Shown: in pieces, positions 736 through 58,386 of the stretch | Position numbering within the stretch: position 1 is the stretch's first letter | How the letters are laid out: every line of letters starts with the position of its first letter | DNA from: Trichoplax adhaerens | Lineage: Eukaryota > Animalia > Placozoa | Length of the DNA: 64,000 nt | Direction: 5' to 3' | Assembly (NCBI RefSeq): GCF_000150275.1 | Contig: NW_002060962.1 | Span: forward strand, 1,047,205 to 1,111,204 | Made by a program: the position numbers and the translations under genes | Notes under the pieces: generated by a model | Seen by the model: only the letters and a program-made list of their open reading frames with translations | What the model was told of the DNA's origin: nothing | The model's database searches: none

Positions 736-2266
736 ACTGTTTCGGCGGTCCACTATCAAGGCGCTAATCAAGTAGTAACCATTCAGCAATACCCAGCACA
801 ACATCCAGCTCCTTATGCAGTCCATTATTCTGCTCAACCTGGTGCGTATCTTTTGTATCATTACAAATACTTTGCTTCCAAAAAACAGATATTACCCATC
901 ACTTTCAGGAAATATTAAATTGCAAACTTTTCGAATTTAATAAGAGAAATAATTGCTGCAACTCTATCAAAATAAGTAGCTATAAGTATCATTCATATGA
1001 AATTCCAAAATACCAGTAGGTAATTGGTAGTGTAGACATCCAAAGTAAAGTCTATTGACATACTCGTACTATTTAATATCTGAAATTTTACGATAGATAT
1101 TCTTTATATAAAAAGATTCATTCTAACAATAGACATCAATTCCGATACCACAATCATAACATTAACTTCTATATTTAATTATAATACTATACAGTTCATT
1201 TAAATTTCATCAACTGTAGTCCAAGTTAATGCGGAGCTAGAATCTCGTGAAAAATATTATTAATCAAGTATATAAAATACATATAATGCTCATCGTGATA
1301 AGGAATACTATGATATAAAATATTGCTTTTTAGCTTACATACGAGTTGTGATATATACCAATCACGAAATTCCAAATTTTAGAAAAATAAGGGCTTTATT
1401 CAATCTTATACAAAGATTAACTACACAACTCTACTCTAGCCGAATGCTACTTGTAAAGACTTCTAGAACGAACTAACAGAATAATCTAAAGTTGCATGCT
1501 TTTATACTTTCCGTAGCATTCGCAGCTACAATCCGCATGGCAACCTTTTACCTTATTTTACACATAGTTAAATTATTCTTAGTAAGACTATTCTACTGCG
1601 GACCATCATTAATCCAATATGGATACGACTACAGTACTTACGTAGACATTATTCACACCAGCCAAAGTACAATGAATTAACCATATCCTAATATATGATT
1701 TACTGTTCTATTTTTACCTATAGCCATATTAGTAACTCAACACCTTACTGTATATAGTCATCTGTACTCCAGCATAGAGTCTCTACCACTACAGTCTATA
1801 GTTACAGCTACCAAATATCTCTTAGGATAAATATCTACCGTACATTATACTAAGCATGGCTAACATTCTACAATCACAATACTAAGTTACATTACACGAG
1901 TATACTCGAACTAGATCCGTAATAGAATATCTTATCTGTATGCAGTCGAATTGTAAATACGTGGAATAAAGCACATTTAGCATAAAAGAATTTTATTTAC
2001 AATTTCAGGAAATTTGTTTAATAGCCTATTTGAAATCACTATGATCTCGGATGCTTTACTAATGTACTATGGAAAATAATTTTAAATTTACACTTTTATT
2101 ATTAGTTATGACTTTCCAACCAACTGTTCCGGTATATGTTCCCAATTCAACAACTGGGCAATATGCAGCCGCTGCTAATCGAACCGCTATTAACAATCCA
2201 GAGAAATCTCAATTGCCGTCTTATAGCAATTTACCAGATTTACAAAGTTCAGCTAACCAGCCTTAA
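736..2266 (+). CDS. Array gene 0 (partial): last two coding exons of an MS4A/CD20-like tetraspan paralog; exons 736-841, 2106-2266
   Basis: AG/GT-bounded exon TVSAVHYQGANQVVTIQQYP... matches exon 4 of the paralogs. Phase-1 splice to VMTFQP...QLPSYSNLP...*. Upstream exons lie before the window. Confidence 0.8.
1347..1896 (-). mobile_element. Solo LTR, family C (550 bp), antisense in the last intron of gene 0
   Basis: TG...CA ends and exact 5-bp TSD CGAGT (1342-1346, 1897-1901). Close copies at 33943-34504 and 51406-51958. TATA and AATAAA read on the minus strand. Confidence 0.9.
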
Positions 2267-3942
2267 ACGATAAATACACGGTGTAATTCAGAATATCCTG
2301 TCTATATACAATGGAAGTTATTCTATGCAACGATAATTACTATATAACATATATATTATCGTGTTTTTATCGCCTATGCAAATAATTATGACATATGACT
2401 TCATATATAAATAATGCTAGGTTATAAGTCTTGCTTTGCATACCAGTAATGTACCGTAACATATAAATTCCCATACTTACAAAATTGATGGCTTATACTA
2501 AAACATGGTTAGATATCATTTATTCGAAACCCTGTAAGAACTAAGCATAAGCAGCTATGCTATAAGTGATGGCATCAAAGTTGACCACATACTCTTTATC
2601 CTTAATTTCCATTGATTTGCCAAGCTGAAATGCTTAAGAAGACATTAGCATCAGAAAAATTAATTAAATTTCTTTAGAATCAAATCTAAAAGTGCAAGTA
2701 ATTCCTGGTAAGGCTAGCCAGTTTGCAATACCTGATGGCCTCTACTATCGAGATAATGAATTTTTACAAGCTCGCTAGTATTTATAGTAGCCTTTTACTT
2801 GCTTACTCAATAGCTTTCTAAAACAAAAATATTGCAAAATGTACAGCAGAATAAGCCGACGTAGAATCTTATTTAAATACTAATATTGTATTAATTAATT
2901 ACTCATAAAGCAAAACAAACCGCAAGTATGTTAAATGAGCACATTATCGTAAACCGTCAGTAAAACGACGGGAGTTTGCACTAGTATCTCCTAATACTTA
3001 TGAAGATAATGATGAAAAAGTTAACTAATATGGCTTTAGTTTGTTAACATCAATTAGTTTAGTACTTTATTTCGTCTTCGGCCTATTTAATAAACTTGTG
3101 TAGGCAGATATTGTCTCTGATAATTGAAATGTCCTTACCGTAAGAAGTGTAGTTGTAAAATATATCAGACTTTGCTCTGTCCTACTTTAATATATATATG
3201 TATGCATTAATTTATCAGTGTACTTTGCACCCGTAGAAATTTGTATTGCTTCGATGATTGGATCTTGCCTTGTTATTTTTGATCACACCATCCTTCAATG
3301 TACAGTATATACAGATTTTAGCATGTTGAAATTAATTGACTAGACTGTCGATTTGCAATGCTCGTATTTGACTTAATTTTTGATATGTGTATATAGTATT
3401 GATTGAAAGAAGTCATTAAACTCAATAAGTAAATTAATAATCCAACCTAAATCAGTTATAGCATTTAGTTAATTATTGAAAATTTGAAAAGGTAAGGTAT
3501 CTCATACATCTCTTGCTTATTCCTTATCGTATGACTGTTTTATGATGATCCACTTTCTAGTCAGTGTTCAAATAGACGATAAATCAAGCTTGTTTTAGGA
3601 ACTCAGTTTGTATACCGTATCTATTTTGTTATTTATGAACTGGAGAATTGAATACTAATTGTTTAAAAGAATATCATACTATCAATTTCTCATGATTAAT
3701 GCATTTGGTCGTACTACATAAAGCATAAATTTCTACTTGCATAATAAATATTTTCCAAATCTACAGTATTACGGAATAAATTCAAAAGCTAAAATTTATT
3801 AAATTATAATTTAACAGTTTTACGTTTTTACCCTTCGATAAAACGAATGAGCTTCTACTTGATATTTTTAGGAAACGTATTTGACAATTTGTAGAGTCTA
3901 AACAGATATTGCAAGTTTTAAAATACTATATCTGCCGCAATA

Positions 3943-6578
3943 ATGGTGCAAAACATGCCGCAAACCCAAATTATGGAGCAACCGCCAGAGCCTCATCAGC
4001 AATCGCAAATGCTTGCAAGTCCTTACATTATTAATCAGGGCTATGGCGGATCTGTATCCAGAGTCCTACCGCAAAGCATTCAAATCCGTATCCGCACCGT
4101 AGGCTTATTTATGTTGATTTTGGGTCTACTTTCATTAATTCTAGGTGTTATTGGGTTTTTTCTTGATGGATATACTATCTATGACGATACCCCCTCATTT
4201 TCTATTATTTGTAATGTACGAGCTTACGTGTACCTTGGAACCAACATATGGTGTGGATTTATTGTGAGTATACTGTTGTGTAAAGATCCTGTAAGCCTTA
4301 GCTTAATAATATAGTACGATAATCCTTGGTAGTTCTCTATGATTGAACGAGAATAGATTATTAATTCCTCATACGAATCGATTAATTCGTCTTTTGTGAT
4401 ATTGAGGCAAAAATTTCTTCTCATTGTTCATTCTGACTTGTTAAGATTTGCTAGTATCATCTAAGAATATCGGTATTAGCAATATTCATCTTCATCGTAC
4501 AGATTGATTAGGATTTCCTAAGATATTTTATACGATGGCTAATAATTTATTATCGTTAATAATACTTTCATTTGATTGCAGTATGCTCTCAGTGGAGTAT
4601 TTTCTCTCCTATCCAATCAATTCAGGGATAATGCTCATCTGGTATAGACTACGCTGATGTTATAATAGCTTAAACAGTTTATAACTGAAGAATTTTGCTA
4701 ATTTATTTCGGAAGCTTTCGATCTGATATGGCTTCTAAATGATTACTTTCTATTTGCAGATGAATACTTTTTATGCTTTCAGTATTATCAGTTTTATTAT
4801 GTCTTTGGCTCATTTTGGCTTAAGCTTCGGGCTAATGTTTCATGATGGACAGCATTGTATCTTATGGTATAATGCTGTTTCTATGCTGATATCTATTGGT
4901 AGTTTTGCTCTCTCTCTCGTTGTCATGATTGTACTTGGCCATCAAATATATTGCAGATCTAATCTTCGGGTAAGTTAAACTACTACTTCTGGCTGCTGCA
5001 TGCCATTGCATAGTTCACTCAGGTAAACGATTAGTATTAAGCTTAGCATATAAAACAACTACAATCGCATTCATATTTATGTTTCTGAGAAGTACTGCAT
5101 AGTATCATGTATAATTATGAATGTCTACTTTTTGCTTTGCTCTTTTTCAAGAATAAAGCATGTTGTTAATTGCTAAATCTGGCTAATAGCAAATTAAAAT
5201 CGTTTAATTTTAAACTGCTTTTATATAAATTGGTCTTTAATTACAGAATGCGATTTCAGTTCATTATATGACTGGCCATCAACTTGTTGCTTTCGGCCAA
5301 CCAGGTATTTTGTTAATTCTTTAATGATTACTCTTAATTGGGATATACTGTAATAAGCACTAAAATAGAACTACTTTAATCGTAGTTAGCCTAATTTCGT
5401 TCCAATTCATTTGAGAAATATTCTAACCTATATATTAATTGCCTCAATTATTTACGCTTTTAAATAAATCGGAAGTTTAACTTAACTACGAGCACTTAGC
5501 TTAACTATTATTCTTATTAGCCAGTAAGTTTACCTCAAAATTATTATGCATAAAATTAATATACCGAGATTATTATGTACAGTTACAAGGCAATTGCTAT
5601 TATAATTTAGTCCAAGATGTCAGTATATCTAAGGTAGCCATAATTTACGAAATCAGGCACTTTGCAAAGTTGAGTAACTTAATATTATTACACTACTAAA
5701 TTATTACATCGGTGCACACCGGTATACAGAATAGGAAAATTTGAGCAATTTACAGATTTCAATTCAATTCAAGGATGATTGTTAATATTTTATCATTAAT
5801 ATCATTAAAATTTTCAAATTATTATGGCATAATTATTATGTAAGAAAGAATCACGCAAAATTTATTAATTTAATTAAGATCATTCAGCGATAATAATTTC
5901 TTCTATACAGCGCATTATTATACTACTAGCAGAAAAGAGAGTAAATATAGAACTCTGACTTTTTATGATTGTAGCTACCCTTTAATTCTGTTCTTGAAGA
6001 AATCCAGGAACAAAAATAATTCTCTTCTCGATCGTAATTTAAGATCGATAGACATATTCTTTTTACTTTCTTTACAAACACTATAATAAGTTGTTTAAAA
6101 TTTCACATTAATCAATTTATAGAATACATTTAATTGAGTAATTACCATACTGCATACCAGTTTCTAATCGAGGAATAGTAGTTGCGAATCGCTACAATGA
6201 AATAATGTTTAGTATCAAGAACTAAACTCTTAGCGATTTTAATATTTTCTAGCAGCGATTATACTTAATAAGGCTACTCATATGATTCTCTAAAAGTGCG
6301 CTTAATTAAGATGCTTTAGCCATTACTACATTGCCTTGTAGCATAATTAAATGCCGGTATCATCTTAATTTGCTATGAATGCATTCTTAGTACCAATGGG
6401 AGTCGCTTATTCCGCTGGGCAACCTGTTTATGTCCAAACAACACCTAATCTACAGTATACAACTGAGATGAACCGGGCTGCAATCTTTCCACCACAGCAA
6501 CCGCCACCTCAATATGATCAATTGGTAGCAATAAATCGAAACGATAATTCGAAGGAAACAGAGAATATCATCGGCTAA
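3943..6578 (+). CDS. Array gene 1: MS4A/CD20-like four-TM protein, ~278 aa; exons 3943-4263, 4582-4641, 4760-4969, 5247-5304, 6391-6578
   Basis: Canonical splice sites and an open frame (837 nt). Four hydrophobic segments, IWCGFI|YALSG motif in TM2, PPPQY in the tail. Confidence 0.88.
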
Positions 6579-11230: not shown

Positions 11231-14102
11231 ATGACTACCGTAATTAATACGCCAAATTTGCAGACTATTCCAGCTCAGCAACCTCAAATATTGCAGCACC
11301 CACAGGTAATGCAACCGCCACAAATAATCCAACAACAACCACAAGTTATTCATACTCCAATTCAGCAAGGCTGCTGTGGTCCAATGCCAAAAATTATACC
11401 AGATAACTTGCGACCTGCAGTATTTCGAGTGGGCATTTGTGCGTTAGTGAATGGTCTTATATCCACCATTTTTGGTATAGTGGGCTTTTTTACCACCAGT
11501 GTTCGAATTCAAGGCCACCATTATACTTATTATTATTCCAACGTTCTGGCTTATATTGCTCCTGATATTTGGTGCGGAATATTTGTAAGTTGCTATAAAT
11601 TGTTGATGTGATCATTAATTGATAAGGTATTGAATCCAATTAATGACTGCATGACTAAATAATAGTGATTGAAATTACTACTAATCCTATTAATAATTCG
11701 GATCTGCAATTTTCTATACTTGCGCTGTCTAAATTAAGATGCTTGCGACAATCTTATAGTATGCTTTGAATGGACTATTTGCCATATTATCGGATCGTAA
11801 CAGAAGGAATGATCATCTAGTAAGAATTATAACCCATTTTGAACAGATAGTTTAAGATTTAATTTTACTTAGTCACTTCAATCTGAGCTCAATTAAGTAA
11901 AATTACGCAATAATGAAGTTGTATATAGTGAATTCTATACTATATTTGACGGACAATATTAACTTTATAGATAAACAGCTGCTATTCCTTCTCTATTATG
12001 AGCTTCATTTTGTCGCTCTTCCATATTGGTCTCAGCTTTGGCTTTATTTTTCATTACCCATCTCATTTCACAGTTTGGTTCAATATTGTGTCGCTGATAT
12101 TAGCGTTGTGTGGATCGGCTTTCTCCTTAACCCACCTTATAATCCTTAGCCGCAATTTATATTGCAGATCGAATGATTCGGTAAGTGTGAAGGTTGTTAA
12201 TGGTCGTTACTTCTGAGTTAAAATATCGAGAAATAAAATTGTCTAGGTCCGATTAAATTAGCATGCAATTACGCTAAAATATAGCAAATACAAATCTATT
12301 ATTTATAATCCTTGCTTAATCTTGAAGCTAGACCAATCGATAAATATAATTGTGAACTAAGGTTTCGGAAATGTGAAATATGCTGCTAGACAGCTTATTC
12401 GCATTCATCGATGTATAGAATTCCTTTAATTAGTACGGTAAATATCATGCCAAAACATGAACAGTATCTATCTAAAAGGTATAATTTCTTCAGACAGCTT
12501 ATTTGCATTCATCAATGGTCTATATTACTGTAATTAGTACAATATCATATAAAAACATGAACAGCATGCACCTGATTATGGATAATGCCAATAAACTACT
12601 AATAATCCATTCTTAGTCTTGATGCCAGACTGATCGATAAGTGTTTTTGTGAAGTAAGATTTCAGAAATGTACGGTCTCCTACTAGATAGCTTATTAGCA
12701 TTTATTGATGACCTGCAGTATTCCTCTAATTAGTGCAATGTAATGTCAAATATGAACAGCACGCATCTAAAAGATAAGATTTCTTAAGATAGATTATTTA
12801 TATTCATCGATGTGCAATACTCCTCTAATTAGTGCCATAAGTGTCAATGTGAACTAAAATTTTCAGAAATGTACGATAGACCGCTACAGTTTATTCGTTT
12901 TCATCGATGTGCAGCAGTACTCTAGTCGGTATAATATTATATCAAAACATGAACTGCCTGCATCTAAATAGTGTAATTTCTGTTGAGAATACCTATAATA
13001 TTATTCCAACTTCTCCATTCTAAGCTATTTAATTCGATAAATTATAAGTTGTTTTTTATGCAAGATACATCATTATTCAATGTCTATTTTTACTCATTAC
13101 AGAAAATGGTTGCTGTTCAGTATAACGGAAGCAATCAAGTTGTCACTTTTGGACAACAAGGTATTTCCAGCACATTTAATAGCACTTTTAATACAGCCAC
13201 CGGTAATTTATAGCGTAGACTTTCATTTATGATTTAAAGATAGTATACTGATGCAGTCTTGCCTAACAAATTTCCTCGTATAAAAATTATGATAACTTAG
13301 ATTACAGTTATTCAAATTACGATTAAATGATCACTTATAGAGGGTTTAACAGAACTCCACCAGGAAGTTGTTTGATTTTATTCTACTTAAAAGTATTAGC
13401 AGTCGGTCGATATAGAGAGTTTAGAGGAAACAGATTCATATGCAACCATGACTGTTAATGCATTAGATTATTTAAGAAGATAGCCATGATGGAATGGTAT
13501 AATTTGGGTGAACTTTATTAACTACATAATAGTAGATTTAGTTTAGATACCATATACCGTTGTTTTGCAATAATCTCATCAGATCGACAATTGGAGAATG
13601 TTTACTTTATGAATCAAGGTAGTATATATTCAAAGTATTAAACTTACTGAAAAGTTTTCATGCCTTTTATTGATGCACTTTTAATCAAACAATTGCAATA
13701 TCATACCATAAGTCACTACAGTAATCTTATTAATGCCCTTAAATAGAGGAAGCACTTGCTTCATAAACGTAGTTGATACACTGTACTTTAGTTGGGTACT
13801 TTAACTGAAGCATCATGTGCCGGCGAATTTAATCTCTATAATTGCTCTATATACAATACATTCTGTTGCAATTTAATCGTGATTAATATTCTATCACGAA
13901 AGATGGTATACCGCTTCTAATTCAGGATTTAATTTTTGTATTAGCTATCGTCTATCCAACGTCTCAGCCAGTATATTTACAGGCTGCACCCGGGGGACAC
14001 TATACTACAGCTATGAATCCTAATTCAGTAGCACCTACATCAATTCAGCAAGTAGCACCTCCACAATATGGAAATTTACCTCAAACCAAAATATCAAATT
14101 AA
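11231..14102 (+). CDS. Array gene 2: MS4A/CD20-like four-TM protein, ~279 aa; exons 11231-11584, 11760-11819, 11971-12180, 13103-13160, 13945-14102
   Basis: Same exon sizes and phases as gene 1, open frame (840 nt). Q/P-rich N-terminus, GCC, DIWCGIF|YALNG, APPQY. Confidence 0.88.
12345..12980. repeat. Degenerate ~100-bp tandem repeat in intron 3 of gene 2
   Basis: Core like GACAGCTTATTCGCATTCATCGATG recurs near 12389, 12494, 12686, 12788 and 12886, with recurring AAACATGAACAG. Confidence 0.7.
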
Positions 14103-17264: not shown

Positions 17265-20186
17265 ATGTCGGGTTTATCAAGGCAGCAATACGTGCAACAA
17301 CCGCAAATGATGCTGCAACCAGAACAGCAATTACAAGCAGCCCAGCAGCAACCTCAAATTGAATCACAAGTGCAAAGAATTCAACAATATTCAATGGCAC
17401 AACAAGTACAAACAGAGCAACAGCAACCATCATTGGGACAGCAGATGTACATGCAGTCACAATCAATGTCACAATCTTATCCCATACAGCAATCACACAT
17501 ACAAATAACTTATCAGAAACAAGCTGCACAACAAAGTTGCTGCTACTCTTGCTGCTGCAGTAGACCTAGAATTTTGTCGAACCAAATGCATTCCGTCAAC
17601 TTTAAACTTGGTATTTGCATGCTGATTGTTGGCGTAACTTCGCTGGTATTTGGCATTATTGGATTTTTTACCACTTCAGTCTACTACGCAAACGGTCCTT
17701 ATCATTTCTATCATTTCAATGCATTGGTCTACAGTATATAGGTCCAAATATTTGGGCTGCAGTATTTGTAAGTCCTACTTATATAAAATTAGGACTACTA
17801 CTGTTATATCGGTATTTCTTGTATTCTTGGGTGTCCCATCATTAAAGCTATCCGCCACACTTATGTTTTCTAAACTACAAAATGAACTCTTGCATCCAAA
17901 TTATACTTTATAGTTCGATGATCACTCACCTGCTCAATTATTAAGATATTTATTATGGTAATTATTTACTGCCCTTGAGTGAATATCTAATTAAAAATTA
18001 TATAGAATCATGATGAATGATTCTTGCACAAATAGTTACTTCTAGACAAGATTTTTTAATTTAACTAAGTATTATGACCGTCTGACACTAATCATTTAGA
18101 CAATGAGAAAAAAAAATTAATAGGTAATATGTTTCATTAGTAAGATAGCTGAGCTTCTAAGTAGTGCAATATTTAGTCGAACTCGCTTTAATGGCTAATT
18201 AAGATAGCGTAAAGCACATCAATGCTGCTAATCTTTCCATTAGTGAATGTTAAGCGAACAGATGTTTATTTAAATTGCTTAAAACAATTATTAAGATAGC
18301 AGATCGTTTATTGATGTATTCTATATGGCTCTAATAGTAAGAGCTAAATCGGCATTCTTAACGTATCAATGGTTCTATTTACCGAGTAATTATCAAGACT
18401 TTTTAATTGCCTGGAGCATTAACTGAATCTTTAATATATTTATTAGTAAAAAATGCCGATAAATTGCATAACCTCAATGATGAGAAATGATTAATATTAT
18501 ACTTATTCGGTTTTTAAAGAATTGCTATTTATGCAATATTAGATAGGTTTTAAGATAAGTAATCTTCTTATTACAGATTTTTAGAGAGACAAAAATAGAG
18601 GACTAGCTGAGGTTGAATAGTTTTCGTTAGTAAAGTTAGTAATTTTATCAAAGTAAGTTTTAGTTAGGCATAAGTAAATGATTAACTTTTGGCGGCGTTG
18701 TAGTCACAAAGAATGCTAATCATCTTATTAGTACAATTTTCAGCTAGGTACAGCTAAATAATGAATTAATTGGCATTTCTAAAAATTCCTTTTAAAATTA
18801 AATTACAATTTTCCTCAAAACAATAGTTAGTCTTTCATCTTATAAATTCTCCTACAAAATATAAGCATGTACAGTATGTGAGTATCGGATTATATTTTAT
18901 AGTAAGCCATCTTTTTAATAATAAAATGATTAAACTATTCTCATTTGAAATTATCTCAATAATTCATCAAATGCGTAATGTTTTCGTCTAATTTACCTTG
19001 CAGTACATCATCAATGGTGCTCTGGCAACAGCAGCAATTCGAAACAAAACCAACATTCACCTGGTTAGGGATATACCATATTTTGTTATCGCATATACCA
19101 TTTCTATGATTAATTTATTAGTTATAAATATTATTAGTGTATAACTTACCATTTTGCTAGATATGTCTGATTTATAATGATGGCTATTATAATATTGTTA
19201 AAAACAGAAAAGATAAAACCAGTTGCTACTTACTGTAGTTTACTAGATTCATATTAAATCATCATTGCTAAGTGTTTATATACTTGAACGTGACCGATTT
19301 CGCATACGGTCACGTTCATACTCGAGGTAACCAACAAATTTATCTTAGACATCATTAATAGCAGCCAAATAAGGGTGTTAGAAGTGTTTTAAACATTTTT
19401 TCTGACCTAAGTCAAACCTTAACTTATATTTACTGATAATTATCTATCCGCTATAGATGAACAGCTTTTATGCCTTTACGATCATGAGCTTTATCTTTTC
19501 AATGGTTCATCTTGGCTTATGTATCGGTACAATATTTATTTATGGCACTAGATCGTCCTTGTGGTATAATACTGTGTCCATTATATTATCTTTCTTTGCA
19601 CTTTCCATCGCCTTAACTTTCACAATAATTCTGAGCCGATATATCTATTGCAAGAAAAGCAACTCTGTAAGCAAATAACGAAAATGGCAAATTATGCATT
19701 ATAAATGCTCCATTTTATGGACATCTTAAAGTCTGCTTCAGAGGCTTAAATTATTTAGTATTTATATGTGTATTGCAAGTGTACTGCTTGTAAATTCTAG
19801 GTTAAATAGCAATTTCAGGACCACAATAGAATTATAACATGCACTGAGGCATAACCTTCTTTTAAATTTTGACTATTATTCAATTAATAGAATATACCTG
19901 CTGTCCAGTTTTATAATCAGCCGGAAGTTGCTCTACCACCAAGGTTGATGCAAGCAGGTAGATAGTTTCTCTTTGAATTACAAGTTTTATCTGTATAGAT
20001 TAGCAGATATCTTTAACTTTATTAATTTCTATTTACTCAAATTCATTAGGAACGGCCTATCCTTCTCCAGTCTATAGGAAAGACGAACAAATAACGCCGA
20101 CTGCATACAATCCAGGTAATGTAGAAGCCATGTCTAAACCAATTCCACAAGAGCTGCCTCAATACTCTAGTGTTGTAAATCGGTAA
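17265..20186 (+). pseudogene. Array gene 3, frameshifted by a 5-bp insertion at 17730-17734; exons 17265-17767, 19004-19063, 19457-19666, 19891-19957, 20050-20186
   Basis: The ORF stops at 17741. Removing TACAG restores NALVYIGPNIWAAVF and a ~323-aa frame. All other exons and splice sites are intact. Confidence 0.85.
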
Positions 20187-22820: not shown

Positions 22821-23633
22821 CACTGCTATAACTTTATAATAATCTTCTCTTCTTAAAAGTATGACGAAAGCTATACTGAATGTAAAGGCAGATAATGCTA
22901 TGCTCAATGATATAAGTTTGTACCAATAGATAGCTCGAGTATATCAGTAAAGCATGAAGCCAGAACTGAGACCAATATGTACACCAGAGAGAATTAAGCT
23001 AAGCATGGATGAAATTGAAAAGTAATTCATCTATTGAAAATAGCAAGAAAAAATGTTTAAGAATCGGTAAGGTAGGACAACGTAAAAGACTGTTATATTT
23101 TATATACTGTAGTGGTATCGACATCACACGAACGTACTATTCATACACTATTTTACTGCTCACAAGACACAGTTGCAAAGATGCCCCAAACTGCATACTG
23201 CAATGAAATATAAATGAAGACAAATATTGTAATTGATCATAGGCTTCGTATAATAGCTTAAGGAAAATCCACGCAGGAATAAGTAAAAAACATGCTCAAT
23301 AAAATGGAAACGGAAATATATTTTGGGTATGGAATAAGATATAATTGAAAAAAATTCCTTTCAGGAAAATAGTTTTAACATCCAACGAGTAGTGAAAATT
23401 CCAATGATCCCAAATCCTACACTCGCAACGCCAGTCAGACATAATACGATACCAAGTCTTAACTGAGCGGCATGAAGATGCAAGGGCAAAGATTTCTCGC
23501 ATGGTATACAACAATTTTCATTAATAGCTTCGTCGTGATTAATTATTTGAGGCGTCTGACCTGGTAACATTTTAGTAAGAGTTTTCGTTTCTTGTGCATC
23601 TTGGACATATTTCACTAGGACAGGAGTAGCCAT
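22821..23633 (-). pseudogene. Array gene 4, pseudogene; remnant exons 23633-~23385, 23197-23138, 23030-22821
   Basis: Exon 1 loses homology after GIFTT and lacks the IWxG segment. Exon 2 reads YAVWGIFATVSCEQ*NSV*I. Exon 3 has an in-frame TGA. Confidence 0.85.
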
Positions 23634-23709
23634 CCTGCTTTGAAATACTTTAATTTTATTGTTAGCTCTACAAGGGTAAATCAAACATAGGTTCCTCATT
23701 ATATCTTGG

Positions 23710-25680: not shown

Positions 25681-25684
25681 GCTA

Positions 25685-34504: not shown

Positions 34505-36124
34505 ATGGTCCAGGTTGAGCCATTTGCACATTGACTTGCTGAATGGGATGGTACTGCATGGGGACTTCAGTTATGGGTACATAAATATAGAGGCAAAAAA
34601 TTAAAAATTTGTAGTTTATTAATGATTTCAAAGAATACGTGCGTTTACTTGCAATCGAATAGAAACTACTTTGATAACATGCAACTTATTTGCTACTGAG
34701 TACAATTTGAGCAGTTATTTAACGATACAGTGATAGGTTGATTTACAGTAATACATACTTACACAATAATAGATACATAGATACTTGTACTATAGCATAT
34801 CCTTGCATATTCTTGTATAGTAAACGACAAGCGCATGTACTTTTATATATTCTTTTATATTGTTTTATAGGCGAGTTTATGTTATGAAGTATTTTTTCAT
34901 GTTTTGCTATTCATTTTACCGAGCTATCAACATTTGTTAAGTATATTAAGCGACTTATAAAACATTGCCGTATTTAACATTAAGATAATCATTACCTAAA
35001 AGTACGATGCAAGCTAGAGATACAGCAAAGCCAATTACTCCCAGGCCCAATGATACGATATTAAACCAGATAGAATGATAAGTACCATAGGAAAAAATAA
35101 ATCCAAAACTGACGCCAATGTGAGGAACTGAGAGGATGATGCTTATAATGCAGAAGGCATAGAAGCAATTTATCTATTAAAAATTACAACAAGTAAACTA
35201 ATATTATTTTAGGTACATAATCCTGTTTTTCTCTTTCCAAGTATAAAATTTTGTCTTTTTATAACTAAAAGTCTAAAGTATTCTGTGAGTGATGGATAGT
35301 CAGTTAAAATTACCAAGTGAATACTGTTTTCTTTCTTGCGGGTTGTAAGAGCGAAGATACCACCTAGTAGGTACTATAAGAAATAAGAGTGATTCAAACC
35401 ATTTGTTGAAAGTTGAGCTGCGATAGATTTAGACGAGATTTTAAAAGAGACTATCCAAACTTTAATAGAACTTTTATGGTATCACTTATCCTGTATTTCA
35501 AGTGCAAAATGGCAGTCATGTCAAATAAACTATCCAAAACGGTACCATACTTTTTATCACGTAATAAAGTTGGATAAATACTCAAAAGCAGGTAAGAAAA
35601 ATAGAAAACCATATGATGCTTTTATTGCAAATATGACGATGGTAGTAGTCATAAAAGCAGTAAGAAAATTACCCACTTGCACTTGTTGACAATAATCAAA
35701 CACTTAAACTATGGGAATTAAGCAAATCCGATATTCAGATTGAAGGAAAGCTAACTGTAGTACACGTATCAAAGCTTACAAAGACTCCTGCCCAAATGTC
35801 TGCGCCTATCCAAGGAGTCATATTGTAGATATAATATGTTGAATTGTAACTAATACCCTGGTAGGTATAAAGATAAGAGTTGGTGAAAAATCCAATGATT
35901 CCGACTAGAAGACTTGTAAGACCGATTAGGACTAATATTATTCCAAGTCCAAACTGTGCAGGTTGAAGTTTGAACGGCAACGACTTCTTACTTGGAATAC
36001 AACAAGATGTAGTAACAACTTGATCTTGATACATTACTTGCGGCTGCTGCGCTGTCATAATCTGTGCTGGTTGTAGTAGTATTTGTGGTTGTTGAATAAA
36101 TTGTGGTTGAGTTGGTAGTGCCAT
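34500..36124 (-). CDS. Array gene 6: four-TM paralog with rearranged, truncated tail (~215 aa, possibly a pseudogene); exons 36124-35780, 35373-35314, 35173-34996, 34564-34500
   Basis: TM exons are open. The end of exon 3 and all of exon 4 are not recognisable. A phase-1 donor at 34995 joins exon 5 in frame, and the TAA stop comes from the LTR terminus. Confidence 0.65.
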
Positions 36125-38017: not shown

Positions 38018-40097
38018 TTAGGCATCACCACTCGCAGTTTTTACTGGTTCTGGCTGAATAGTAGCAGTTTGAGTTTGAGTAGGGGCTACAGTATACCCCC
38101 CAACAGGCGCAACTTGCGTGTACGTTGGTTGAGCGGGTTGGTATTGCATTATGACTTGATCATTAATATGAAAACAAGAAAATTAGTATTTGCTACACTA
38201 ATTATTCTATTTAAATTATCTGTGCATAATCTTACGCAAACTACCATACTTAAACTATTTAACTTAACCTTAAGAGATATCATAAACACACGAAAAATAT
38301 CACACTTAATGCTACTGAAATGAGATAATTCATAAATGCATGGATGGAAGAGGTAAAATCTTTCCATAAATAGAAAAGGCAAACTCTTTCCCTAATAGCA
38401 TAGTATCCTCTGACAACACATGAATATTACAATTGATTTGATTTTCTTTACAAAATGATCATAGTATCAATTAGAGGATAGTCAGGAATAGCCTACAGAT
38501 CACAATTTGTGATCATATTTAACATGAAATTATTATTACCTGGTTGGTTAGGATATTGTTGGTTAGGGTATTGTTGGTTAGGATATTGCTGCACAGTTAG
38601 AACTTGACTTTTACCTTGAAATTGGACTGTGTAAGCACCCTAAAATTGAGGCCATGATATCAATATATCTATTTATGATTACTCAACAAATTCATATACA
38701 TATTTTAATCTATAAATCAGTAATAAATGCGAGCCAAAAATGGCTATTTAATAAGTGAAATTAAAGCATGAACATAGAAAGCTTGATATGTACAGTATCA
38801 TATGCAGTCTTATAAAGGATTAATTTTTTAACGAAGAGCAAGAACTGAAGAAATTTATTATTTTGAGATAAAATTTTCATATTTTATAAGATACTGAAAT
38901 TGTTTCACTAACCGGTGGGGTAGGTTTACAATAAATTTCTTTACTTAAAAGTATGATGAAAGTCAAACTGCAAGAAAAGCCAATTAATGCAAAAATCATT
39001 GAAACAATGTTGAACCATTCCGTGTAACGAGCGCCGTAGTTAAACATAAAGCCAAGGCTTAAGCCAAAGTGAGGTAATGATAATATAAAGCTCATTATCG
39101 AGAAAGCATAGAAGGTGTTCATCTATTAAAAATTACAACAGCCAGATAAAATGAAGTAATTAGTTGTAACGATCTTTCCAGTCGTTAAGGTAATTATAAG
39201 TAGGTAATTAGAATTTAATTGTTACAGTTTGGAATGTTTTACGCGCATTGTATTTGATAATCAGAATTACCTGATGAACGTCGTTTTGTTTCTTGTAAGT
39301 AACAGCGGCTAAGATTCCACATATGAAATACTGCAGCAAAAAGATTTCGAAACTTGAGTTAAAATTTATCTTATTTCGATGTTATGATACATTTTCAAAA
39401 TGTGACAACAATACTAAGGCATATATTAGATAAATGGTCATTGTATTATAGTATTCAGGGTATTCATTTATGACCGTAGACAGTTAAATTACTTAAACTA
39501 CAGTAGTTAAATTATACAAAACCTGGAAAACAGAATGATAGTGAAATAGTGTATCAGAGAATTGAAAACCTTGTATTACATCTACTGCAGTAACAATGAT
39601 AGTAATTGATTATACTGGTATTTATATTTGTCAAGACTCCCTTACGTTATGGAAGTACTAGATAGGAAACGAAAGCTCGTCAATATTAGAAATAGAAAGA
39701 ATTGCTCATTACTGTCAAACATATTTTCAGTAACAACTTTATCAATGCTTACAAATAATCCTCCCCAAATATCTCCGGCGTACCAACTGGTTGGATTATA
39801 ATAGGTATAATAAGTATGAGAATGGAACGAGTAGCCTCTATAATTGGCCTTGAAAATTCCAACGGTACCGAATATCACACTGGCTAGACCAGACAGGCTC
39901 AAGAAGATGCCAAGTCCTAATTGGGTGGAGCGAAATTTAATCGGTAAAAATTTACCATGTGGTCTGCACATACCGGTACCAGAAGGAGCCTTATTTTGTT
40001 TGTGTATTATTTGTGGCTGCTGGACAGGAATCATTTGTGCTGGCTGTTGAATTACTAGCGGTTGTTGGACGTATTGTGGTTGAGCAGGAGTAGCCAT
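38018..40097 (-). CDS. Array gene 7: MS4A/CD20-like four-TM protein, ~283 aa; exons 40097-39753, 39330-39271, 39122-38913, 38639-38540, 38154-38018
   Basis: Canonical splice sites, open frame (852 nt), DIWGGLF|YFICG, (QYPNQ)x3 in exon 4. Confidence 0.88.
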
Positions 40098-45471: not shown

Positions 45472-46917
45472 TTAATATCGAGCAGGATCACCTTGGAACT
45501 TGATTGCATATGGGGTCTATAACACATTAGTAAAAATTAAGAATAGAAACTTTATTTATAACCTATTCTATGAATACTTCAGTAATGTAATTCGTATAGT
45601 CTTTATGGCAACGACATCTGGCTATTTTCTACTACCGTACATTTTATTGCTTTTGCTATAACTACAAGTTATTGTACTAAGCATTTAGGAATAGAGCTGC
45701 AATGACTATTGGTCAACATTATGTTAATTTGGCATAAAGTACAATCTAAAAGCAGCATGTCTTAAATTATTAAATTCGAATTATGTGACTAACTTGTGGC
45801 CCAGAAATGCAGAAAATATTTTTTAGTAAAAATCTTATAAAAACGGCGGAAATAAGGAATCCAATCCCTGCCAAAACTAAGGAGGCGATATTGAACCACA
45901 TACTCAGTGCGACTCCATATACAAACATGAAACCAAAGCTCACACCAATATGTAAAACTGACATGGATAGGCTTATAATCGTGAATGCATAATAGCTATT
46001 CAGCTGTCCATTTGGAAAAGAAGGGATGCCACATATGTCAGTTTTATATTCATTTTAATTTAAATTTTTCGACAATTTATCTTATATTAATCTGTAGTAA
46101 CAATCTAATTCAATTCAGTTTTATTACTCCTAATTTACCAAATGAAAATTTTTTCGCGCATTCTGATGTTCTACTATAGCAAAGATACCACAAACAATAT
46201 ACTTTAATAAGAAATCAAAAAATGAACACAATCCACGTTAGTATTGCCTGTAGAGGGTATATAAATCAAGGAAAAATGGCAGGACCATGCTTATAAAACG
46301 CATTAATTAATTAAACTCAGTGCATCTCTTTCCATAAGTTAAAATCATAAAATTTGATTGTAATCCTGAAGATAATATTGTTTACTTTATTGCTGCTTCT
46401 AGTTAAGTTATTCATATATAACAATATTAAAAATGCTATCGTCCTTTACCTACTCATATTAATAACTCTAAAAATCTGTAATTTTTATTCTTTATCAACC
46501 CAACTTGGGCGTTATTATACACTAAATTATTAAAAAATGAATTTATTATACCAAAATAAAAATAAATCATTAAGAAATACATGATACAGGCATTCTTTAC
46601 GGCTAAAAATTACTATAAAGTTATTGACTTACGAAAAACCCTGCCCAAATGTCTGCGCCTACCCATGTTGTGGGATTATGGTAAACATAGCCTTGCAAAT
46701 GAGAGTCAGGTACAGTTGTGGTAAAAATTCCAACGATGCCTAAGACCATGCTAGCTAGACCACATATCATTAAAACGATTGCAAGTCCAAATTGTGCTGG
46801 ACGGAAATTAGAAGGTAATGATTTCCCATGTGGAATACAATATCCTGGATTCTCAGCGGGCAGATAAGAAATAACTTGAGGCATTTGGCTTTGCTTCGAT
46901 ACTACTGGAAGAGACAT
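45472..46917 (-). CDS. Array gene 8: four-TM paralog with shortened tail (~200 aa); exons 46917-46633, 46201-46139, 46003-45794, 45516-45472
   Basis: TM exons are intact. Exon 4 is 65 nt to its donor at 45451 versus 70 nt in gene 5, giving an early TAA at 45474-45472. Confidence 0.72.
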
Positions 46918-52844: not shown

Positions 52845-53846
52845 AGTACTTAGTCAATATTATAACAAAGCTGTAAAGTTTGCAAACAGTTAGGACCTTC
52901 AGCTATAATACAAAACGAGCCTTTCGATACTGTCACAAAGAAATAAAAGCTGTACAGTGTCGGTGAAGAAAACTTCATAAAAGAAATGACAATTTTTAGG
53001 TAATTAATATATCATCGTGCTTTGAGATCTTGCAATCAGTACTACTTTCCGGAGAGATCTAATAGTAAAATCTGTACGTGGTCATTATAGCGAAATGGAT
53101 GCCAAATTGCACTGCTGATAATACCAGGCTGATTATACTTAAAGCGTAGAAACGATTGACCTAAAATTGGAAAAGTTTAAAAGTGCGTACAAGTGTTATA
53201 GCAGATTTTATATTGATCATAATAAATATAACTTTTCGGGCAGGTCTAGAGTCATTATAGGCCCAAGTATGCAACTAAAGATATAATAAAAATCAAACTA
53301 TCCATACCATTAGCTGGTTAATTTCATTATACCGTAGTATAACAGCAAAGATTCCACCAAAGATATACTGAGGAAGAATGCAAGAATATCAGTAGATCAC
53401 CTAGCATTTCATCAATTAGAATAGAATAAATTCTGTATTTGTAATGAAAAACGATACTATAGATATCTAGGATTTGAAAGTACCACAATTTTATAATGAT
53501 AAATTACATGGTACTGAAAAAATAGCCATATGGTTAACTGAAACTTGTACTATTACGTTAAATAGGCCTTATCAAGAAAATCCATAGATTAATATCTACT
53601 TACAAACAAGGTAATCCATAAATCGATCGATATTAATGTGGCAGGGGTTCTGTTAAATAAAACAATAGAGAAAACAAGACATCCAAGCAGGCAAAAGACA
53701 GACAAAATTATCATCAAAATGGTAATCTTTGATCTTGGGCAAATTCGCTTAGGTATAGATCGTTTGGGCATGCAAGATGGATAAGCAAATCGGCGAAGTT
53801 TCTTTAACTGCTTATCACTAAGTTCTTGGTCAAGTTCCGTAGGCAT
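52845..53846 (-). pseudogene. Array gene 9: divergent paralog, probably a pseudogene; exons 53846-53604, 53367-53308, 53160-(stop 53059)
   Basis: Same splice pattern (DLWITLF|YIFGG...|VNRFYALS). TAG follows TM3. A TM4-like remnant SFVIILTKYF lies near 52880-52845. Confidence 0.68.
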
Positions 53847-56170: not shown

Positions 56171-58386
56171 CTAAACAAGCTGGGGTGGATTAGCAGACAC
56201 TGGTTGAGGATACATCATAAATTGTCCATTTTGAGATGGTTGTGCATAAATACTTGCAGCAGGTGGATCAATATTTTCTGTCGGAAAAAATTAAAATTTT
56301 TGATTAGAGCGATTGCTCATACTTATTTTCAGAGGATCACTGATTATATAGTGTCAATTTTAAAATAAGTAAGAAACTTAATTCTGTTAGAACATAATAT
56401 CATTCGAAAAGCAGAATCTTAGTAATTTACGTTCACGACTTTGAACTTTCTAACAGTGATTATATTTGATATTGCAGTAATTAGCACTATAATATAGAAT
56501 AGTTCTTAAGTATTGCAAATGAAATTGTTGTAGTAATTAGACGAAAGCGATTTTATGTAGACTTTATTCAGGCATTCATTACGGTCGAGTACCAATAGTA
56601 GTGGTGAAGGAACTTGATAGACCGTAGCTAGGTTAAATTAAGATAAGTTTTCTTGAACGATTGACCAAAGTTTTTAAACTACAAACAACTGGATTAGATA
56701 CTTACCAGGTTATCATTACATTGCAAAGTGATTCTAATGACTTTTACAACCTCATCAACTGCAAAACTTTTCTTGCTTTAAGCAGGAATTGAATAAATTT
56801 TAAAGTCATAGATAAAATGCTCTATTACAGTAATAATTATAATAGCTGCAGAGTACATCCAACTTGAATTTTCAGCCTTCAAAATATTTAAGAAATGCGC
56901 ATACAATCTGTAAAGATATCGTTGCACAGGTACAGTATATCGCTACCTTAGTAGTGCAATATTCATAAAACTAGGAAATATTTTACCTGTTTGAATAGGA
57001 TACGGTTGGAATATTACCGTTTGATTTTGTATGTTCCCCTAAACCATTAGCAATTACAACAGTTTGTTACATATTTTATATGGTACTTTATGAAAGTCTA
57101 ATAAAATTCACAAGAACTGTCGAATTTGGTGATCGTTAACGTTTATTAAAGTCAATTTTATAATAGTGGCATAGATAATGAGTTGCAGCTAGCTTTATGA
57201 TTTATAATACTAATGCGATATTATGGCATACGCAAATGGCAACTGAAGGACATTGATTATCTTGCGGTAATACTACCAGGATGCGTGTAAACTGCATAAT
57301 ATTTATCTTGATAGAAGGTGATGAGCACATAATACAAAATAAACTATAATATTTTTTACTTACACTTTCAGCAGGTCGGCAGTAGATTGTACGTGAAAGG
57401 ATAATCATCATGGCTAAGGCTAAGGAAAAAACAACAACTCCTAAAAACATCGAGGCGATGTTATGCCAATACAAATAATGAGCACTGTGGGCAAACATAG
57501 ATGCCAATGAAATTCCAAATTGGAGTATGGAGAAAAATAAGCTGATTATTACAAAGGCATAGTAAGAGTTCATCTGTAATAAATTCAAACGTTATTAGTT
57601 ATTCAAGGCCCATATAGTATTCTATTAATAAGGCACTTTTAAAAGCTAATTATGGCGAGGGTATCTATATTAAAAGTCGCATTACTTAAAAGTATGTAAC
57701 GCCATATCAGACTTGAATATATCAATCAATTGCATATATCTTACCAAATGGTGATTGTCTTTATGAAAATGAATAGTAGCTGCAAAAATTCCACAAATGC
57801 AATACTAAAGAAATTAAATATTCTTCATGAATATCATTTAATGTTAGGCCAGTTGTAAATGGACCTGTTATTTTTGTCTGCTGATATCTTGACGGTTCAC
57901 CGATTACAGTACGATATTCATTGCACTACACGGTCGGTATACGAATTATTATTTATGAAATATGAATCAATACGGAAATACTGCCAAGATTTAAAAGTAT
58001 CAAATTATAGAATGCTAAAGTTTATTCATCAAGAATCAATAATATCAAAAATTTACTATTCATAAGTATATTTTAGTTTCTATAATCTCAATAGAATCAA
58101 GATAATTAGCAACAGAATTCATATTTAACCGAAAATTAAGTCATCTTACCGAAATCCCAACCCATATATCTAATGCTATGACAACAGAAGGGTTGTAGCA
58201 ATACCCATGGAAGCCGTATCCAATGCCACCTAAGATGATACTGACAAAGCCAATAACTGAAATGGTGATGCCGATTCCTAAAGATGTAGGACGCAAGTGC
58301 AATGGCAATAGGAAGTTGTTGTAATATCTTTGATAACTAAATGATTCTGGCTGGTACGGATGGTGCCCACTAATTTCAGCAGACAT
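56171..58386 (-). CDS. Array gene 10: short MS4A/CD20-like four-TM protein, ~221 aa; exons 58386-58150, 57804-57745, 57573-57364, 57038-56987, 56277-56171
   Basis: Canonical splice sites, open frame (666 nt), DIWVGIS|YCICG. Confidence 0.85.

What the first reader, a model, noticed from the sequence alone, without database searches (positions are those of the whole stretch)
736..58386. Eleven-member tandem array of MS4A/CD20-like four-TM genes in active birth-and-death
Seen: 11 paralogs with a shared exon plan, strongly diverged proteins, five complete intact copies and five damaged ones. Known: MS4A proteins have four TMs, a W-G motif in TM2 and cytoplasmic termini, are clustered in mammals, and act as immune receptor subunits and as chemosensors in mouse necklace olfactory neurons. 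Inference: this is an independent lineage-specific expansion of a non-GPCR sensing or recognition receptor repertoire in a simple animal.
Basis: partly seen in the sequence, partly recalled or inferred. Interest (0 to 1): 0.85.

Follow-up and report, generated by a model that had tools for sequence, protein, structure and literature searches.

The report
Trichoplax CD20-like four-helix gene array
This stretch of the placozoan Trichoplax adhaerens genome holds eleven neighbouring, anciently diverged copies of a small four-helix membrane protein gene that are real distant relatives of the CD20/MS4A family; about half are intact, at least two are transcribed, and their function is unknown.

Summary
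The window (Trichoplax adhaerens) carries 11 loci of one gene family with a shared five-exon plan. Five have complete reading frames (c1, c2, c5, c7, c9). c8 has an intact core but no tail was found. c3, c4, cX and the reference allele of c6 are damaged. c0 runs off the window start. RNA contigs confirm every intron of c7 and three of c6.

CD20/MS4A kinship is supported:
- The database protein of c1 just passes Pfam CD20 (28.3 bits against a cut-off of 27.9).
- 32 of 38 homologs found with a window-derived profile hit CD20.
- Profiles hit solved FcεRI-β (MS4A2) and CD20 first.
- The AlphaFold model's best structural match is FcεRI-β.

All 18 T. adhaerens members tested form one clade, so the expansion is lineage-specific. 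It is also much larger than the finding says: about 15 loci in this array and at least 34 in the genome. The window copies are old (35-55% identity), so decay is visible but recent birth is not.

A sensory role is untested. The extracellular surface is small, and only c0-c2 keep a C-terminal PPxY-type motif. The scan has already reported several similar CD20-like clusters elsewhere in this genome. This is a new member of a known kind, of moderate interest.

The parts
736..2266 (+). c0: the tail exons only (E4 about 739-840, E5 about 2105-2263 plus stop). E1-E3 lie upstream of the window. The tail carries an LPSY motif.
   Evidence: The upstream exons are in L008 (E1 from 6903, E3 9053-9265).
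3943..6578 (+). c1, complete, 278 aa. Exons: E1 3943-4263, E2 4582-4641, E3 4760-4969, E4 5247-5304, E5 6391-6578 including the stop. It has a PPQY motif near the C-terminus.
   Evidence: Identical to database protein P0008. Pfam CD20 28.3 bits against a cut-off of 27.9. AlphaFold model with four helices.
11231..14102 (+). c2, complete, 293 aa. Exons: E1 11231-11584, E2 11760-11819, E3 11971-12180, E4 13103-13202, E5 13945-14102. It has a PPQY motif near the C-terminus. Database model P0031 skips E2 and E3.
17265..19666 (+). c3, damaged. Exons: E1 17265-17767 with a frameshift, E2 19004-19063, E3 19457-19666. No tail exons were found.
17730..17736 (+). The lesion in c3: the sequence TACAGTA. 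Removing 5 bp restores the V-Y-I-G-P-N-I-W reading seen in the paralogs. This is the form of a Tc1/mariner excision footprint.
   Evidence: A comparable TACAG insertion polymorphism lies behind 37833 in RNA runs.
22833..23633 (-). c4, pseudogene. E1 23633-23382 is truncated before ECL1 and TM2. E2 about 23197-23144 has stops. E3 23030-22833 has an internal stop.
27474..29380 (-). c5, complete, 267 aa. Exons: E1 29380-29054, E2 28713-28648, E3 28506-28297, E4 28012-27943, E5 27604-27477 plus stop. No PY motif.
34500..36124 (-). c6, transcribed. Exons: E1 36124-35780, E2 35373-35314, E3 35173-34996 (shortened), E5 from about 34564. The reference allele lacks 33 nt of E3, intron 3 and E4, with the frame kept. 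A 5'-UTR intron lies at 36159-36232.
   Evidence: Joints in RNA contigs, and 100 extra letters at 34997. Protein P0006 carries the missing 34 residues.
34996..34997 (-). Junction of the internal deletion in the reference allele of c6. Contigs of the DNA-like run X1 also break here.
38018..40097 (-). c7 (TRIADDRAFT_61181), complete and transcribed, 283 aa. Exons: E1 40097-39753, E2 39330-39271, E3 39122-38913, E4 38639-38540, E5 38154-38018. The 57-nt mini-intron in E1 of database model P0001 is not spliced in RNA contigs.
45794..46917 (-). c8. The core is intact (E1 46917-46633, E2 46201-46139, E3 46003-45794). No tail exons were detectable downstream.
53059..53846 (-). cX, truncated. E1 53846-53604, E2 53367-53308, E3 53160-53062, which ends at a TAG after 33 codons. 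TM4 is missing.
56171..58386 (-). c9, complete as predicted, 221 aa. Exons: E1 58386-58150, E2 57804-57745, E3 57573-57364, E4 57038-56987, E5 56277-56174 plus stop. ECL1 is short. It groups with the 889-932 kb cluster rather than with c1-c8.

Best explanation
The window is the larger part of a tandem array of about 15 loci, roughly 82 kb long, of a placozoan-specific clade of the CD20-like superfamily (Pfam PF04103, the family of MS4A1/CD20 and MS4A2/FcεRI-β). Each gene has five exons and encodes a protein of 220-290 residues.

Shown: a Gln/Pro-rich cytoplasmic N-terminus, often with a Cys-Cys pair before TM1; four long helices; a Tyr/His-rich first outer loop that varies in length and sequence; a very short second outer loop; a Cys just after TM4; and a Gln/Pro-rich cytoplasmic tail.

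Also shown: homology, topology, exon plan, splicing of c6 and c7, decay of four copies, and monophyly of the T. adhaerens members.

Inferred: like other CD20-family proteins, these are not enzymes. They are small membrane scaffold or accessory subunits that sit in the plasma or endosomal membrane and act through protein contacts.
- Copies that keep the ancestral C-terminal PPxY/LPxY motif (c0, c1, c2 and the upstream neighbours) probably dock Nedd4-type WW-domain ubiquitin ligases and so control trafficking or turnover of themselves or partner proteins (about 45%).
- Copies without the motif (c5, c7, c9) may have changed or lost that role.
- A ligand-sensing role through the variable first loop is possible but less likely (about 10-15%).
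For: - Organism and gene: c7 is TRIADDRAFT_61181.
- Pfam CD20 is the top or only hit for c7 (19.9 bits), c6 (20.4) and c1 (28.3, above the cut-off of 27.9), and for the paralogs P0005, P0007 and P0009 (28.2-28.3).
- A profile made from window exons plus two T. adhaerens proteins found 56 proteins among 1.84 billion. Of 38 full-length ones, 32 hit CD20, the best at 3e-28.
- A T. adhaerens-only profile hits FcεRI-β at E 1.2e-3 and CD20 next, with unrelated chains at E 0.2 or weaker. The wider profile gives 5.8e-15 and 7.5e-10 against 0.076 for the first unrelated chain, aligned over all four helices.
- The AlphaFold model has four helices with pLDDT above 90. The top three Foldseek hits are FcεRI-β. 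The exhaustive aligner puts FcεRI-β first at Z 16.8, then sarcospan at Z 16.
- The nearest ESM Atlas clusters are invertebrate CD20-like clusters.
- Lys+Arg counts are 17, 17 and 17 on the predicted inner segments against 4 and 3 on the outer loops.
- Spliced RNA contigs exist for c6 and c7.
- In the tree, the 18 T. adhaerens rows form one clade with support 97.
- PPxY-type motifs lie near the C-terminus in c0-c2, P0005 and P0007, and in the C-terminal tail of about half of the 23 foreign homologs (14 carry a [PL]PxY motif somewhere), aligned in one block.
Against: - Direct scores of the window proteins against CD20 are marginal (20-28 bits). Single exons give no CD20 hit. P0002, from a sister cluster, weakly prefers SUR7/Amastin.
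- The strong E-values rest on transitive homology through unnamed proteins whose organisms could not be looked up.
- Fold scores for four-helix bundles are inflated. A tetraspanin reaches Z 14.6, and the stated background for helical models is about 13-14.
- The PY motif is missing from three of the six complete tails here, and no partner was tested.
- A homodimer prediction gave no answer.
- Nothing shows where in the animal or the cell the proteins sit.
Confidence: 0.8

Rival explanations
1. The array is a non-GPCR chemosensory or recognition receptor repertoire. The variable Tyr/His-rich first outer loop would bind ligands, as the outer loops of mouse necklace-neuron MS4A proteins are reported to do.
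For: - It is a clustered, lineage-specific, strongly diverged family with pseudogenes, which is the pattern typical of chemoreceptor families.
- ECL1 is the least conserved structured segment (29% mean identity against 55% for TM3). In the window subclade it is expanded to 18-29 residues, against 6-9 in the other T. adhaerens clusters and in c9.
- Ascidian MS4A clusters have been proposed as chemoreceptors (bioRxiv 10.1101/2022.08.15.492342).
Against: - The outer surface is tiny: ECL2 about 5 residues and ECL1 at most about 29.
- No recent duplicates lie in the window, and some copies seem conserved as specific orthologs elsewhere. That is not the rapid turnover seen in chemoreceptor families.
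- There are no cell-type data.
- The N-terminal and tail regions are as variable as ECL1, so the variability is not specific to the outside.
Confidence: 0.12
2. The family is not homologous to CD20/MS4A at all. It would be an unrelated or convergent four-helix membrane family (claudin/PMP22/amastin-like, tetraspanin-like or orphan) that matches CD20 only through generic transmembrane composition, as Zuccolo et al. 2010 argued for invertebrate 'MS4A-like' sequences.
For: - Single exons give weak hits to Amastin, TMEM238 and PIRT, not CD20.
- P0002 gives SUR7/Amastin at E 4e-4 to 1e-3.
- Zuccolo et al. concluded that invertebrates lack MS4A-like genes (PMC2826416).
Against: - CD20 is the top Pfam family for every full-length window protein tested, and it passes the curated cut-off for c1 and three paralogs.
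- The eight best PDB sequence hits of profile A4 are all MS4A2 or MS4A1, with a gap of 4 or more orders of magnitude to unrelated chains.
- Claudin-19 scores E 0.48, and claudin folds reach only Z 10-12.
- The aligned W-x-G and G-x-L motifs of TM2 and the basic TM2-TM3 turn are position-specific, not compositional.
Confidence: 0.06
3. The loci are mostly decaying relics. On this reading the array is a dying family with little present function, and the apparently intact frames persist by chance.
For: Four of eleven loci are visibly damaged, and c8 lacks a detectable tail. A deletion allele of c6 is present in the reference.
Against: - Five copies keep complete frames of 220-290 codons with canonical splice sites despite 45-65% protein divergence, which needs purifying selection.
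- c6 and c7 are transcribed and correctly spliced.
- TM3 and motif positions are conserved across the whole T. adhaerens clade.
Confidence: 0.05

Closest known systems
MS4A2 (FcεRI β subunit) and MS4A1 (CD20), vertebrate MS4A family, Pfam PF04103
   Same: - Four TM helices with both ends cytoplasmic.
- A W-x-G motif entering TM2 and a Gly in mid-TM2.
- A basic TM2-TM3 turn.
- Genes in tandem clusters.
- Best sequence-profile and fold matches.
   Different: - Only 14-17% identity.
- The long loop here is ECL1 and it is aromatic-rich. CD20 has its long, disulfide-bonded loop at ECL2.
- Gln/Pro-rich termini, and no ITAM as in FcεRI-β.
- A C-terminal PPxY motif in part of the copies.
- Orthology to any vertebrate MS4A gene is not claimed.
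Ascidian and amphioxus MS4A clusters (29 genes in Ciona robusta; bioRxiv 10.1101/2022.08.15.492342)
   Same: Invertebrate CD20-like genes in tandem clusters with lineage-specific duplication.
   Different: Those are chordate genes, with reported expression in sensory palp cells and signs of positive selection in the outer loops. Neither could be tested here. The placozoan copies are older and more diverged.
Sarcospan (dystrophin-glycoprotein complex subunit)
   Same: Second-best structural match of the model (Z 16.0-16.1, rmsd 2.0-2.3 Å over 131-135 residues). It is a small four-helix accessory subunit of a larger membrane complex.
   Different: There is no sequence-level hit in the PDB profile searches, and no evidence of a dystroglycan-type complex here.
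PY-motif membrane adaptors of Nedd4-family ligases (NDFIP1/2, LAPTM4/5; from general knowledge)
   Same: Small multi-pass membrane proteins with cytoplasmic PPxY/LPxY motifs. c0, c1, c2 and many relatives carry one near the C-terminus.
   Different: There is no homology. This is 'works like', not membership. The motif is absent from c5, c7 and c9, and binding was not tested.
Other CD20-like tetraspan clusters of T. adhaerens noted earlier by this scan (s1-764959, s1-739343, s1-751086, s1-806462)
   Same: Same genome and the same kind of tandem four-helix genes with PY tails. The cluster on C1411 and the one at 889-932 kb fall in the same clade as the window copies.
   Different: The window subclade (c1-c8 plus the upstream neighbours) is set apart by its expanded aromatic ECL1.

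Membership tests
CD20-like family (Pfam PF04103; MS4A superfamily) | Match to the family HMM at or above the curated gathering score | tested here: met
   c1 (P0008) scores 28.3 bits against the cut-off of 27.9. Paralogs P0005, P0007 and P0009 score 28.2-28.3. c7 (19.9) and c6 (20.4) are below the cut-off, but CD20 is their top hit. The pass is marginal.
CD20-like family (Pfam PF04103; MS4A superfamily) | Significant sequence-profile similarity to experimentally characterised members | tested here: met
   The T. adhaerens-only profile A5 hits FcεRI-β at E 1.2e-3, with 8 of the 9 best hits being MS4A proteins. The extended profile A4 hits FcεRI-β at 5.8e-15 and CD20 at 7.5e-10, with the next unrelated chain at 0.076.
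CD20-like family (Pfam PF04103; MS4A superfamily) | Four transmembrane helices with cytoplasmic N- and C-termini | tested here: met
   AlphaFold places helices at 44-78, 94-120, 125-153 and 159-192 with pLDDT above 90. The Lys+Arg distribution is 17/17/17 inside against 4/3 outside. This is prediction only.
CD20-like family (Pfam PF04103; MS4A superfamily) | Conserved W-G motif at the start of TM2 and small residues in TM2 | tested here: met
   W103 and G105 are nearly invariant and G112 is invariant in A5. They align with the W-G-G of CD20 and the W-G-A of FcεRI-β.
CD20-like family (Pfam PF04103; MS4A superfamily) | Fold resembles solved MS4A structures more than other four-helix membrane folds | tested here: inconclusive
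   FcεRI-β ranks first (Z 16.8; Foldseek E 5.9e-3, TM 0.67). However, a tetraspanin reaches Z 14.6, and helical bundles have a high background.
CD20-like family (Pfam PF04103; MS4A superfamily) | Intron positions shared with vertebrate MS4A genes | not tested
The intron positions within the placozoan family itself are conserved.
Vertebrate MS4A clade proper (orthology) | Nested within, or sister to, vertebrate MS4A genes in a tree | not testable with these tools
The T. adhaerens genes form their own clade.
Claudin/PMP22 superfamily | Match to the family HMM; large ECL1 with a β-sheet and the W-GLW-C-C signature | tested here: not met
   No Pfam claudin/PMP22 hit at E up to 0.01. Claudin-19 scores E 0.48. 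Claudin folds reach Z 10-12. ECL1 is predicted to be coil or helix, not sheet.
Tetraspanin (PF00335) | Large ECL2 with the CCG motif | tested here: not met
   ECL2 is about 5 residues. There is no Pfam tetraspanin hit. The best Foldseek tetraspanin has TM 0.27-0.29.
Nedd4-ligase PY adaptors (functional class, not a homology family) | Cytoplasmic PPxY/LPxY motif that binds WW domains | tested here: inconclusive
   The motif is present in c0 (LPSY), c1 and c2 (PPQY) and is conserved in relatives. It is absent from c5, c7 and c9. Binding was not tested.

The most novel reading that the evidence does not exclude
The subclade in this window (c1-c8 plus three upstream neighbours) has turned a CD20-like scaffold into a diversified surface-recognition repertoire. 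On this reading its expanded, hypervariable Tyr/His-rich first outer loop is a ligand- or partner-binding surface. Placozoans, which lack neurons, would then use MS4A-type proteins as non-GPCR chemosensors or self/microbe recognition molecules, so that the sensory use of this family predates bilaterians.
Probability: 0.1. Interest if true: 0.8.

Novelty: new member of a known kind. Interest (0 to 1): 0.38.

Why it matters
This places well-supported CD20/MS4A-type genes, already organised in tandem clusters, in one of the earliest-branching animal lineages. That runs against the older conclusion that invertebrates lack MS4A-like genes (PMC2826416). It offers a simple animal in which the basic cell-biological job of this medically important family (CD20, FcεRI-β, the MS4A risk genes) could be studied without an adaptive immune system. 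It also corrects several public gene models: the false mini-intron in TRIADDRAFT_61181, exons skipped in the model of c2, and c5, c8 and c9 having no full-length model among the database hits. The gain is incremental. Pfam already lists invertebrate CD20-like proteins, tunicate clusters have been described, and this scan has reported sister clusters in the same genome.

Tried and rejected
- Pfam on single exon translations gave no CD20 hit, only weak noise. Full-length database proteins were needed.
- An alignment mixing full-length proteins with E1 and E2 fragments (A1) was misaligned and was dropped in favour of A2.
- The word-indexed protein search found only 1-5 relatives. The exhaustive search was the useful one.
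They were used only inside local scripts. Database proteins P0008 (c1), P0001 (c7) and P0006 (c6) stood in for them, so c2, c5, c8 and c9 were searched only exon by exon.
The organisms of the 23 foreign homologs and of the short fragments are therefore unknown.
- The homodimer prediction for the c1 core gave 'no answer'. It is not evidence either way.
- A conserved N-glycosylation site in ECL1 was considered and rejected. The conserved N-P-T/S has Pro at the middle position, and real sequons occur only in c5 and c6 (and in the upstream paralog P0005).
- No tail exons were found for c8 and c3, either by similarity or by composition.
- No papers mention TRIADDRAFT_61181, and none link MS4A with placozoans in substance.
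- Rfam and the tRNA scan of the window found nothing.

Full report
**Origin of the window.** The window has about 30% G+C and only short open frames. The longest family exon matches protein TRIADDRAFT_61181 of Trichoplax adhaerens. The window lies at 1,047,205-1,111,204 of a 1.2-Mb scaffold of that genome.

**The observation.** A six-frame self-comparison of all frames of 35 or more codons gives two groups of nine related segments plus smaller groups. Using the annotated gene (copy c7) as a guide, I placed its five exons and then found the matching exons of the other copies with their splice sites.
- There are eleven loci. c0-c3 are on the + strand and c4, c5, c6, c7, c8, cX and c9 on the - strand.
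- The plan is constant. E1 holds the Gln/Pro-rich N-terminus, TM1, the first outer loop and the W-x-G entry of TM2. E2 (60-66 nt) holds the rest of TM2 and a basic turn. E3 (210 nt wherever complete) holds TM3, a five-residue loop, TM4 and a Tyr-Cys.
- E4 and E5 hold the Gln/Pro-rich tail.
- All modelled introns are GT-AG. Their phases are 0, 0, 0 and 1.
- A profile of E3 scores the window copies at E 1e-28 to 1e-37.

**State of the copies.**
- Complete frames: c1 (278 aa, identical to database protein P0008), c2 (293 aa), c5 (267 aa), c7 (283 aa) and c9 (221 aa, tail predicted).
- c8 has an intact E1-E3 core, but no tail could be found.
- c3 carries the seven letters TACAGTA at 17730-17736. 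Taking out five of them restores the reading shared by the paralogs, so this is a 5-bp insertion of the form left by Tc1/mariner excision.
- c4 has a truncated E1 and stops in E2 and E3. cX stops after 33 codons of E3.
- In the reference, c6 lacks the last 33 nt of E3, intron 3 and E4. RNA contigs carry 100 extra letters at exactly that point, and database protein P0006 carries the 34 missing residues. The deletion is therefore an allele or an assembly fault, and it keeps the frame.
- c0 starts upstream of the window.

**Transcription.** Contigs from two RNA-seq runs (X4, X7) and from X5, whose RNA label is only a guess, show joints at all four introns of c7 and at the E1/E2 and E2/E3 introns of c6. 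They also show a 5'-UTR intron of c6. A DNA-like run (X1) is collinear with the genome. The 57-nt 'intron' inside E1 of the public model P0001 is not spliced in any contig, so the real c7 protein is 19 residues longer. Only this 5.8-kb stretch could be laid. Expression of the other copies is unknown.

**Family assignment: direct evidence.**
- Exon by exon, Pfam gives nothing for CD20.
- Full-length database proteins do. CD20 (PF04103) is the top hit of c7 (19.9 bits, below the 27.9 cut-off) and of c6 (20.4).
- CD20 passes the cut-off for c1 (28.3) and for T. adhaerens paralogs P0005, P0007 and P0009.

**Family assignment: transitive evidence.**
- A profile of two T. adhaerens proteins plus eight window E3 exons (A2) already put CD20 first among solved structures (E 0.0023, next unrelated 0.4).
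- The same profile, run against 1.84 billion representative proteins, found 56 at E up to 1e-3. Of 38 full-length ones, 32 match Pfam CD20, the best at 3e-28.
- A profile of twelve T. adhaerens proteins alone hits FcεRI-β at E 1.2e-3. Eight of the nine best hits are MS4A2 or CD20.
- The wider profile A4 hits FcεRI-β at 5.8e-15 and CD20 at 7.5e-10 over all four helices. The first unrelated chain scores 0.076.
- The W-x-G at the start of TM2, the Gly in TM2 and the basic TM2-TM3 turn line up with those of CD20 and FcεRI-β.

**Family assignment: structure and language-model evidence.**
- The AlphaFold model of c1 has four helices with pLDDT above 90.
- Foldseek ranks three FcεRI-β chains first (E 5.9e-3, TM 0.67).
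- An exhaustive structural scan ranks FcεRI-β first (Z 16.8) and sarcospan next (Z 16). A tetraspanin reaches 14.6, CD20 11.4 and claudins 10-12. For helical bundles this margin is small, so the fold is supportive only.
- The ESM Atlas's nearest clusters are invertebrate (mollusc, echinoderm) clusters that carry CD20.

**Topology and surface.**
- Lys+Arg counts over eight copies are 17, 17 and 17 for the segment before TM1, the TM2-TM3 turn and the segment after TM4. They are 4 and 3 for the two other loops. Both ends are therefore inside, as in MS4A proteins.
- The second outer loop is about five residues.
- The first outer loop is 18-29 residues and 23-48% aromatic or His in c1-c8 and the upstream neighbours. 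It is only 6-9 residues in c9 and in the other T. adhaerens clusters.
- It is the least conserved structured segment (29% mean identity against 55% for TM3). The termini are equally variable.

**Extent and age.**
- The genome holds at least 34 E3-type exons. Three more genes lie directly upstream of c0 (four more E3 exons, counting c0's own) and none in the 10 kb downstream. This makes an array of about 15 loci.
- Other groups: eight or nine loci at 889-932 kb on the same scaffold, nine on another scaffold, and a few singletons.
- In a maximum-likelihood tree of 41 proteins, all 18 T. adhaerens rows form one clade (SH-aLRT 97) apart from 23 foreign homologs. c1-c8 and the upstream genes form a subclade, and c9 groups with the 889-932 kb cluster. 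I left out fragments, P0022, and the second half of P0002.
- Terminal branches are 0.4-1.0 changes per site, and the copies share no DNA-level repeats.
- Several short foreign fragments match one particular T. adhaerens copy much better than any other, for example 65% to E1 of c9 against 42% for the next. This suggests that the copies predate a species split, but the source organisms could not be looked up.
- The expansion is therefore lineage-specific but old. Loss is visible in the window; recent gain is not.
- A 2,511-bp tandem repeat, identical over the 300 nt the tool reported, in the sister cluster may be a recent duplication or an assembly artefact.

**Function.**
- Nothing here is enzymatic. 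By homology the proteins should be small scaffold or accessory subunits.
- A PPxY/LPxY motif lies near the C-terminus of c0, c1, c2, P0005 and P0007, and in the C-terminal tail of about half of the 23 foreign homologs (14 carry a [PL]PxY motif somewhere), aligned in one block. It is probably ancestral and points to Nedd4-type ligase docking.
- c5, c7 and c9 lack the motif.
- I rate an adaptor or trafficking role as most likely (about 45%), a receptor-subunit or other scaffold role next, and ligand sensing through ECL1 at 10-15%.
- A homodimer prediction returned no answer.

**Literature and earlier notes.**
- Zuccolo et al. 2010 concluded that invertebrates lack MS4A-like genes (PMC2826416).
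- A later preprint describes 29 clustered MS4A genes in Ciona and uses amphioxus MS4A proteins as an outgroup.
- I found nothing on placozoans.
- This scan has already noted several CD20-like tetraspan clusters elsewhere in this genome, with mixed verdicts on the kinship.
- In my tree, members of two other clusters fall in the same clade as the window genes.

**Limits.**
- Intron positions of vertebrate genes were not compared.
- The c3 and c6 lesions were not checked against reads of the reference strain.

Noticed in passing
window 37833-37835: RNA runs X4 and X7 (another strain or species label) carry TACAG inserted behind 37833, in the 3' untranslated region of c7. This creates the same TACAGTA string as the lesion in c3. 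It looks like a second Tc1/mariner-type excision footprint, here polymorphic.
   Followed up: partly
window 1423-1877, 33943-34445 and 51426-51958: An interspersed repeat of about 450-500 bp in three copies (90-95% identical, one inverted) lies between family genes. There is no Pfam hit on its short frames. It is probably a non-autonomous transposable element. A second repeat pair lies at 16237-16467 and 49360-49590 (95%).
   Followed up: partly
window 23861-24229 and 26123-26481: Two adjoining direct repeats (160 and 205 nt, 84-92% identical) lie about 2.25 kb apart in the spacer between c4 and c5.
   Followed up: no
window 61715-63101, minus strand: To the right of the array lies an unrelated multi-pass membrane gene. 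One exon gives a sub-threshold EamA-like transporter hit (22.2 bits, E 1.8e-4).
   Followed up: partly
L004:44-343 and 2555-2854 (scaffold position about 915 kb): A tandem duplication with a 2,511-bp period lies inside a sister cluster. The 300 nt the tool reported are 100% identical, and the duplicated exons encode identical peptides. It explains the internally duplicated public protein P0002 (450 aa). It is either a very recent gene duplication or an assembly artefact.
   Followed up: partly
G000:C1409:5090438-5094878 and C1408:3618838-3618963: Weak exon-level hits of the Pfam CD20 model (E 0.04-0.8) lie outside the family studied here. They may be other CD20-like genes of T. adhaerens.
   Followed up: no
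window 39915-39971 (c7) and 11585-13102 (c2): Two public gene models are wrong. P0001 removes 57 nt of E1 that RNA contigs keep. P0031 skips E2 and E3 of c2. c5 and c9 had no full-length model among the database hits.
   Followed up: yes
E4 of c0, c5 and c7, and paralogs P0005 and P0007: A conserved tail motif of the form V-x-Y-Q-x(3-4)-Q-V-[VL]-T-[IV]-Q-Q-Y-P has no known function. In c7 the Y-P-N-Q-Q unit is repeated three times.
   Followed up: no
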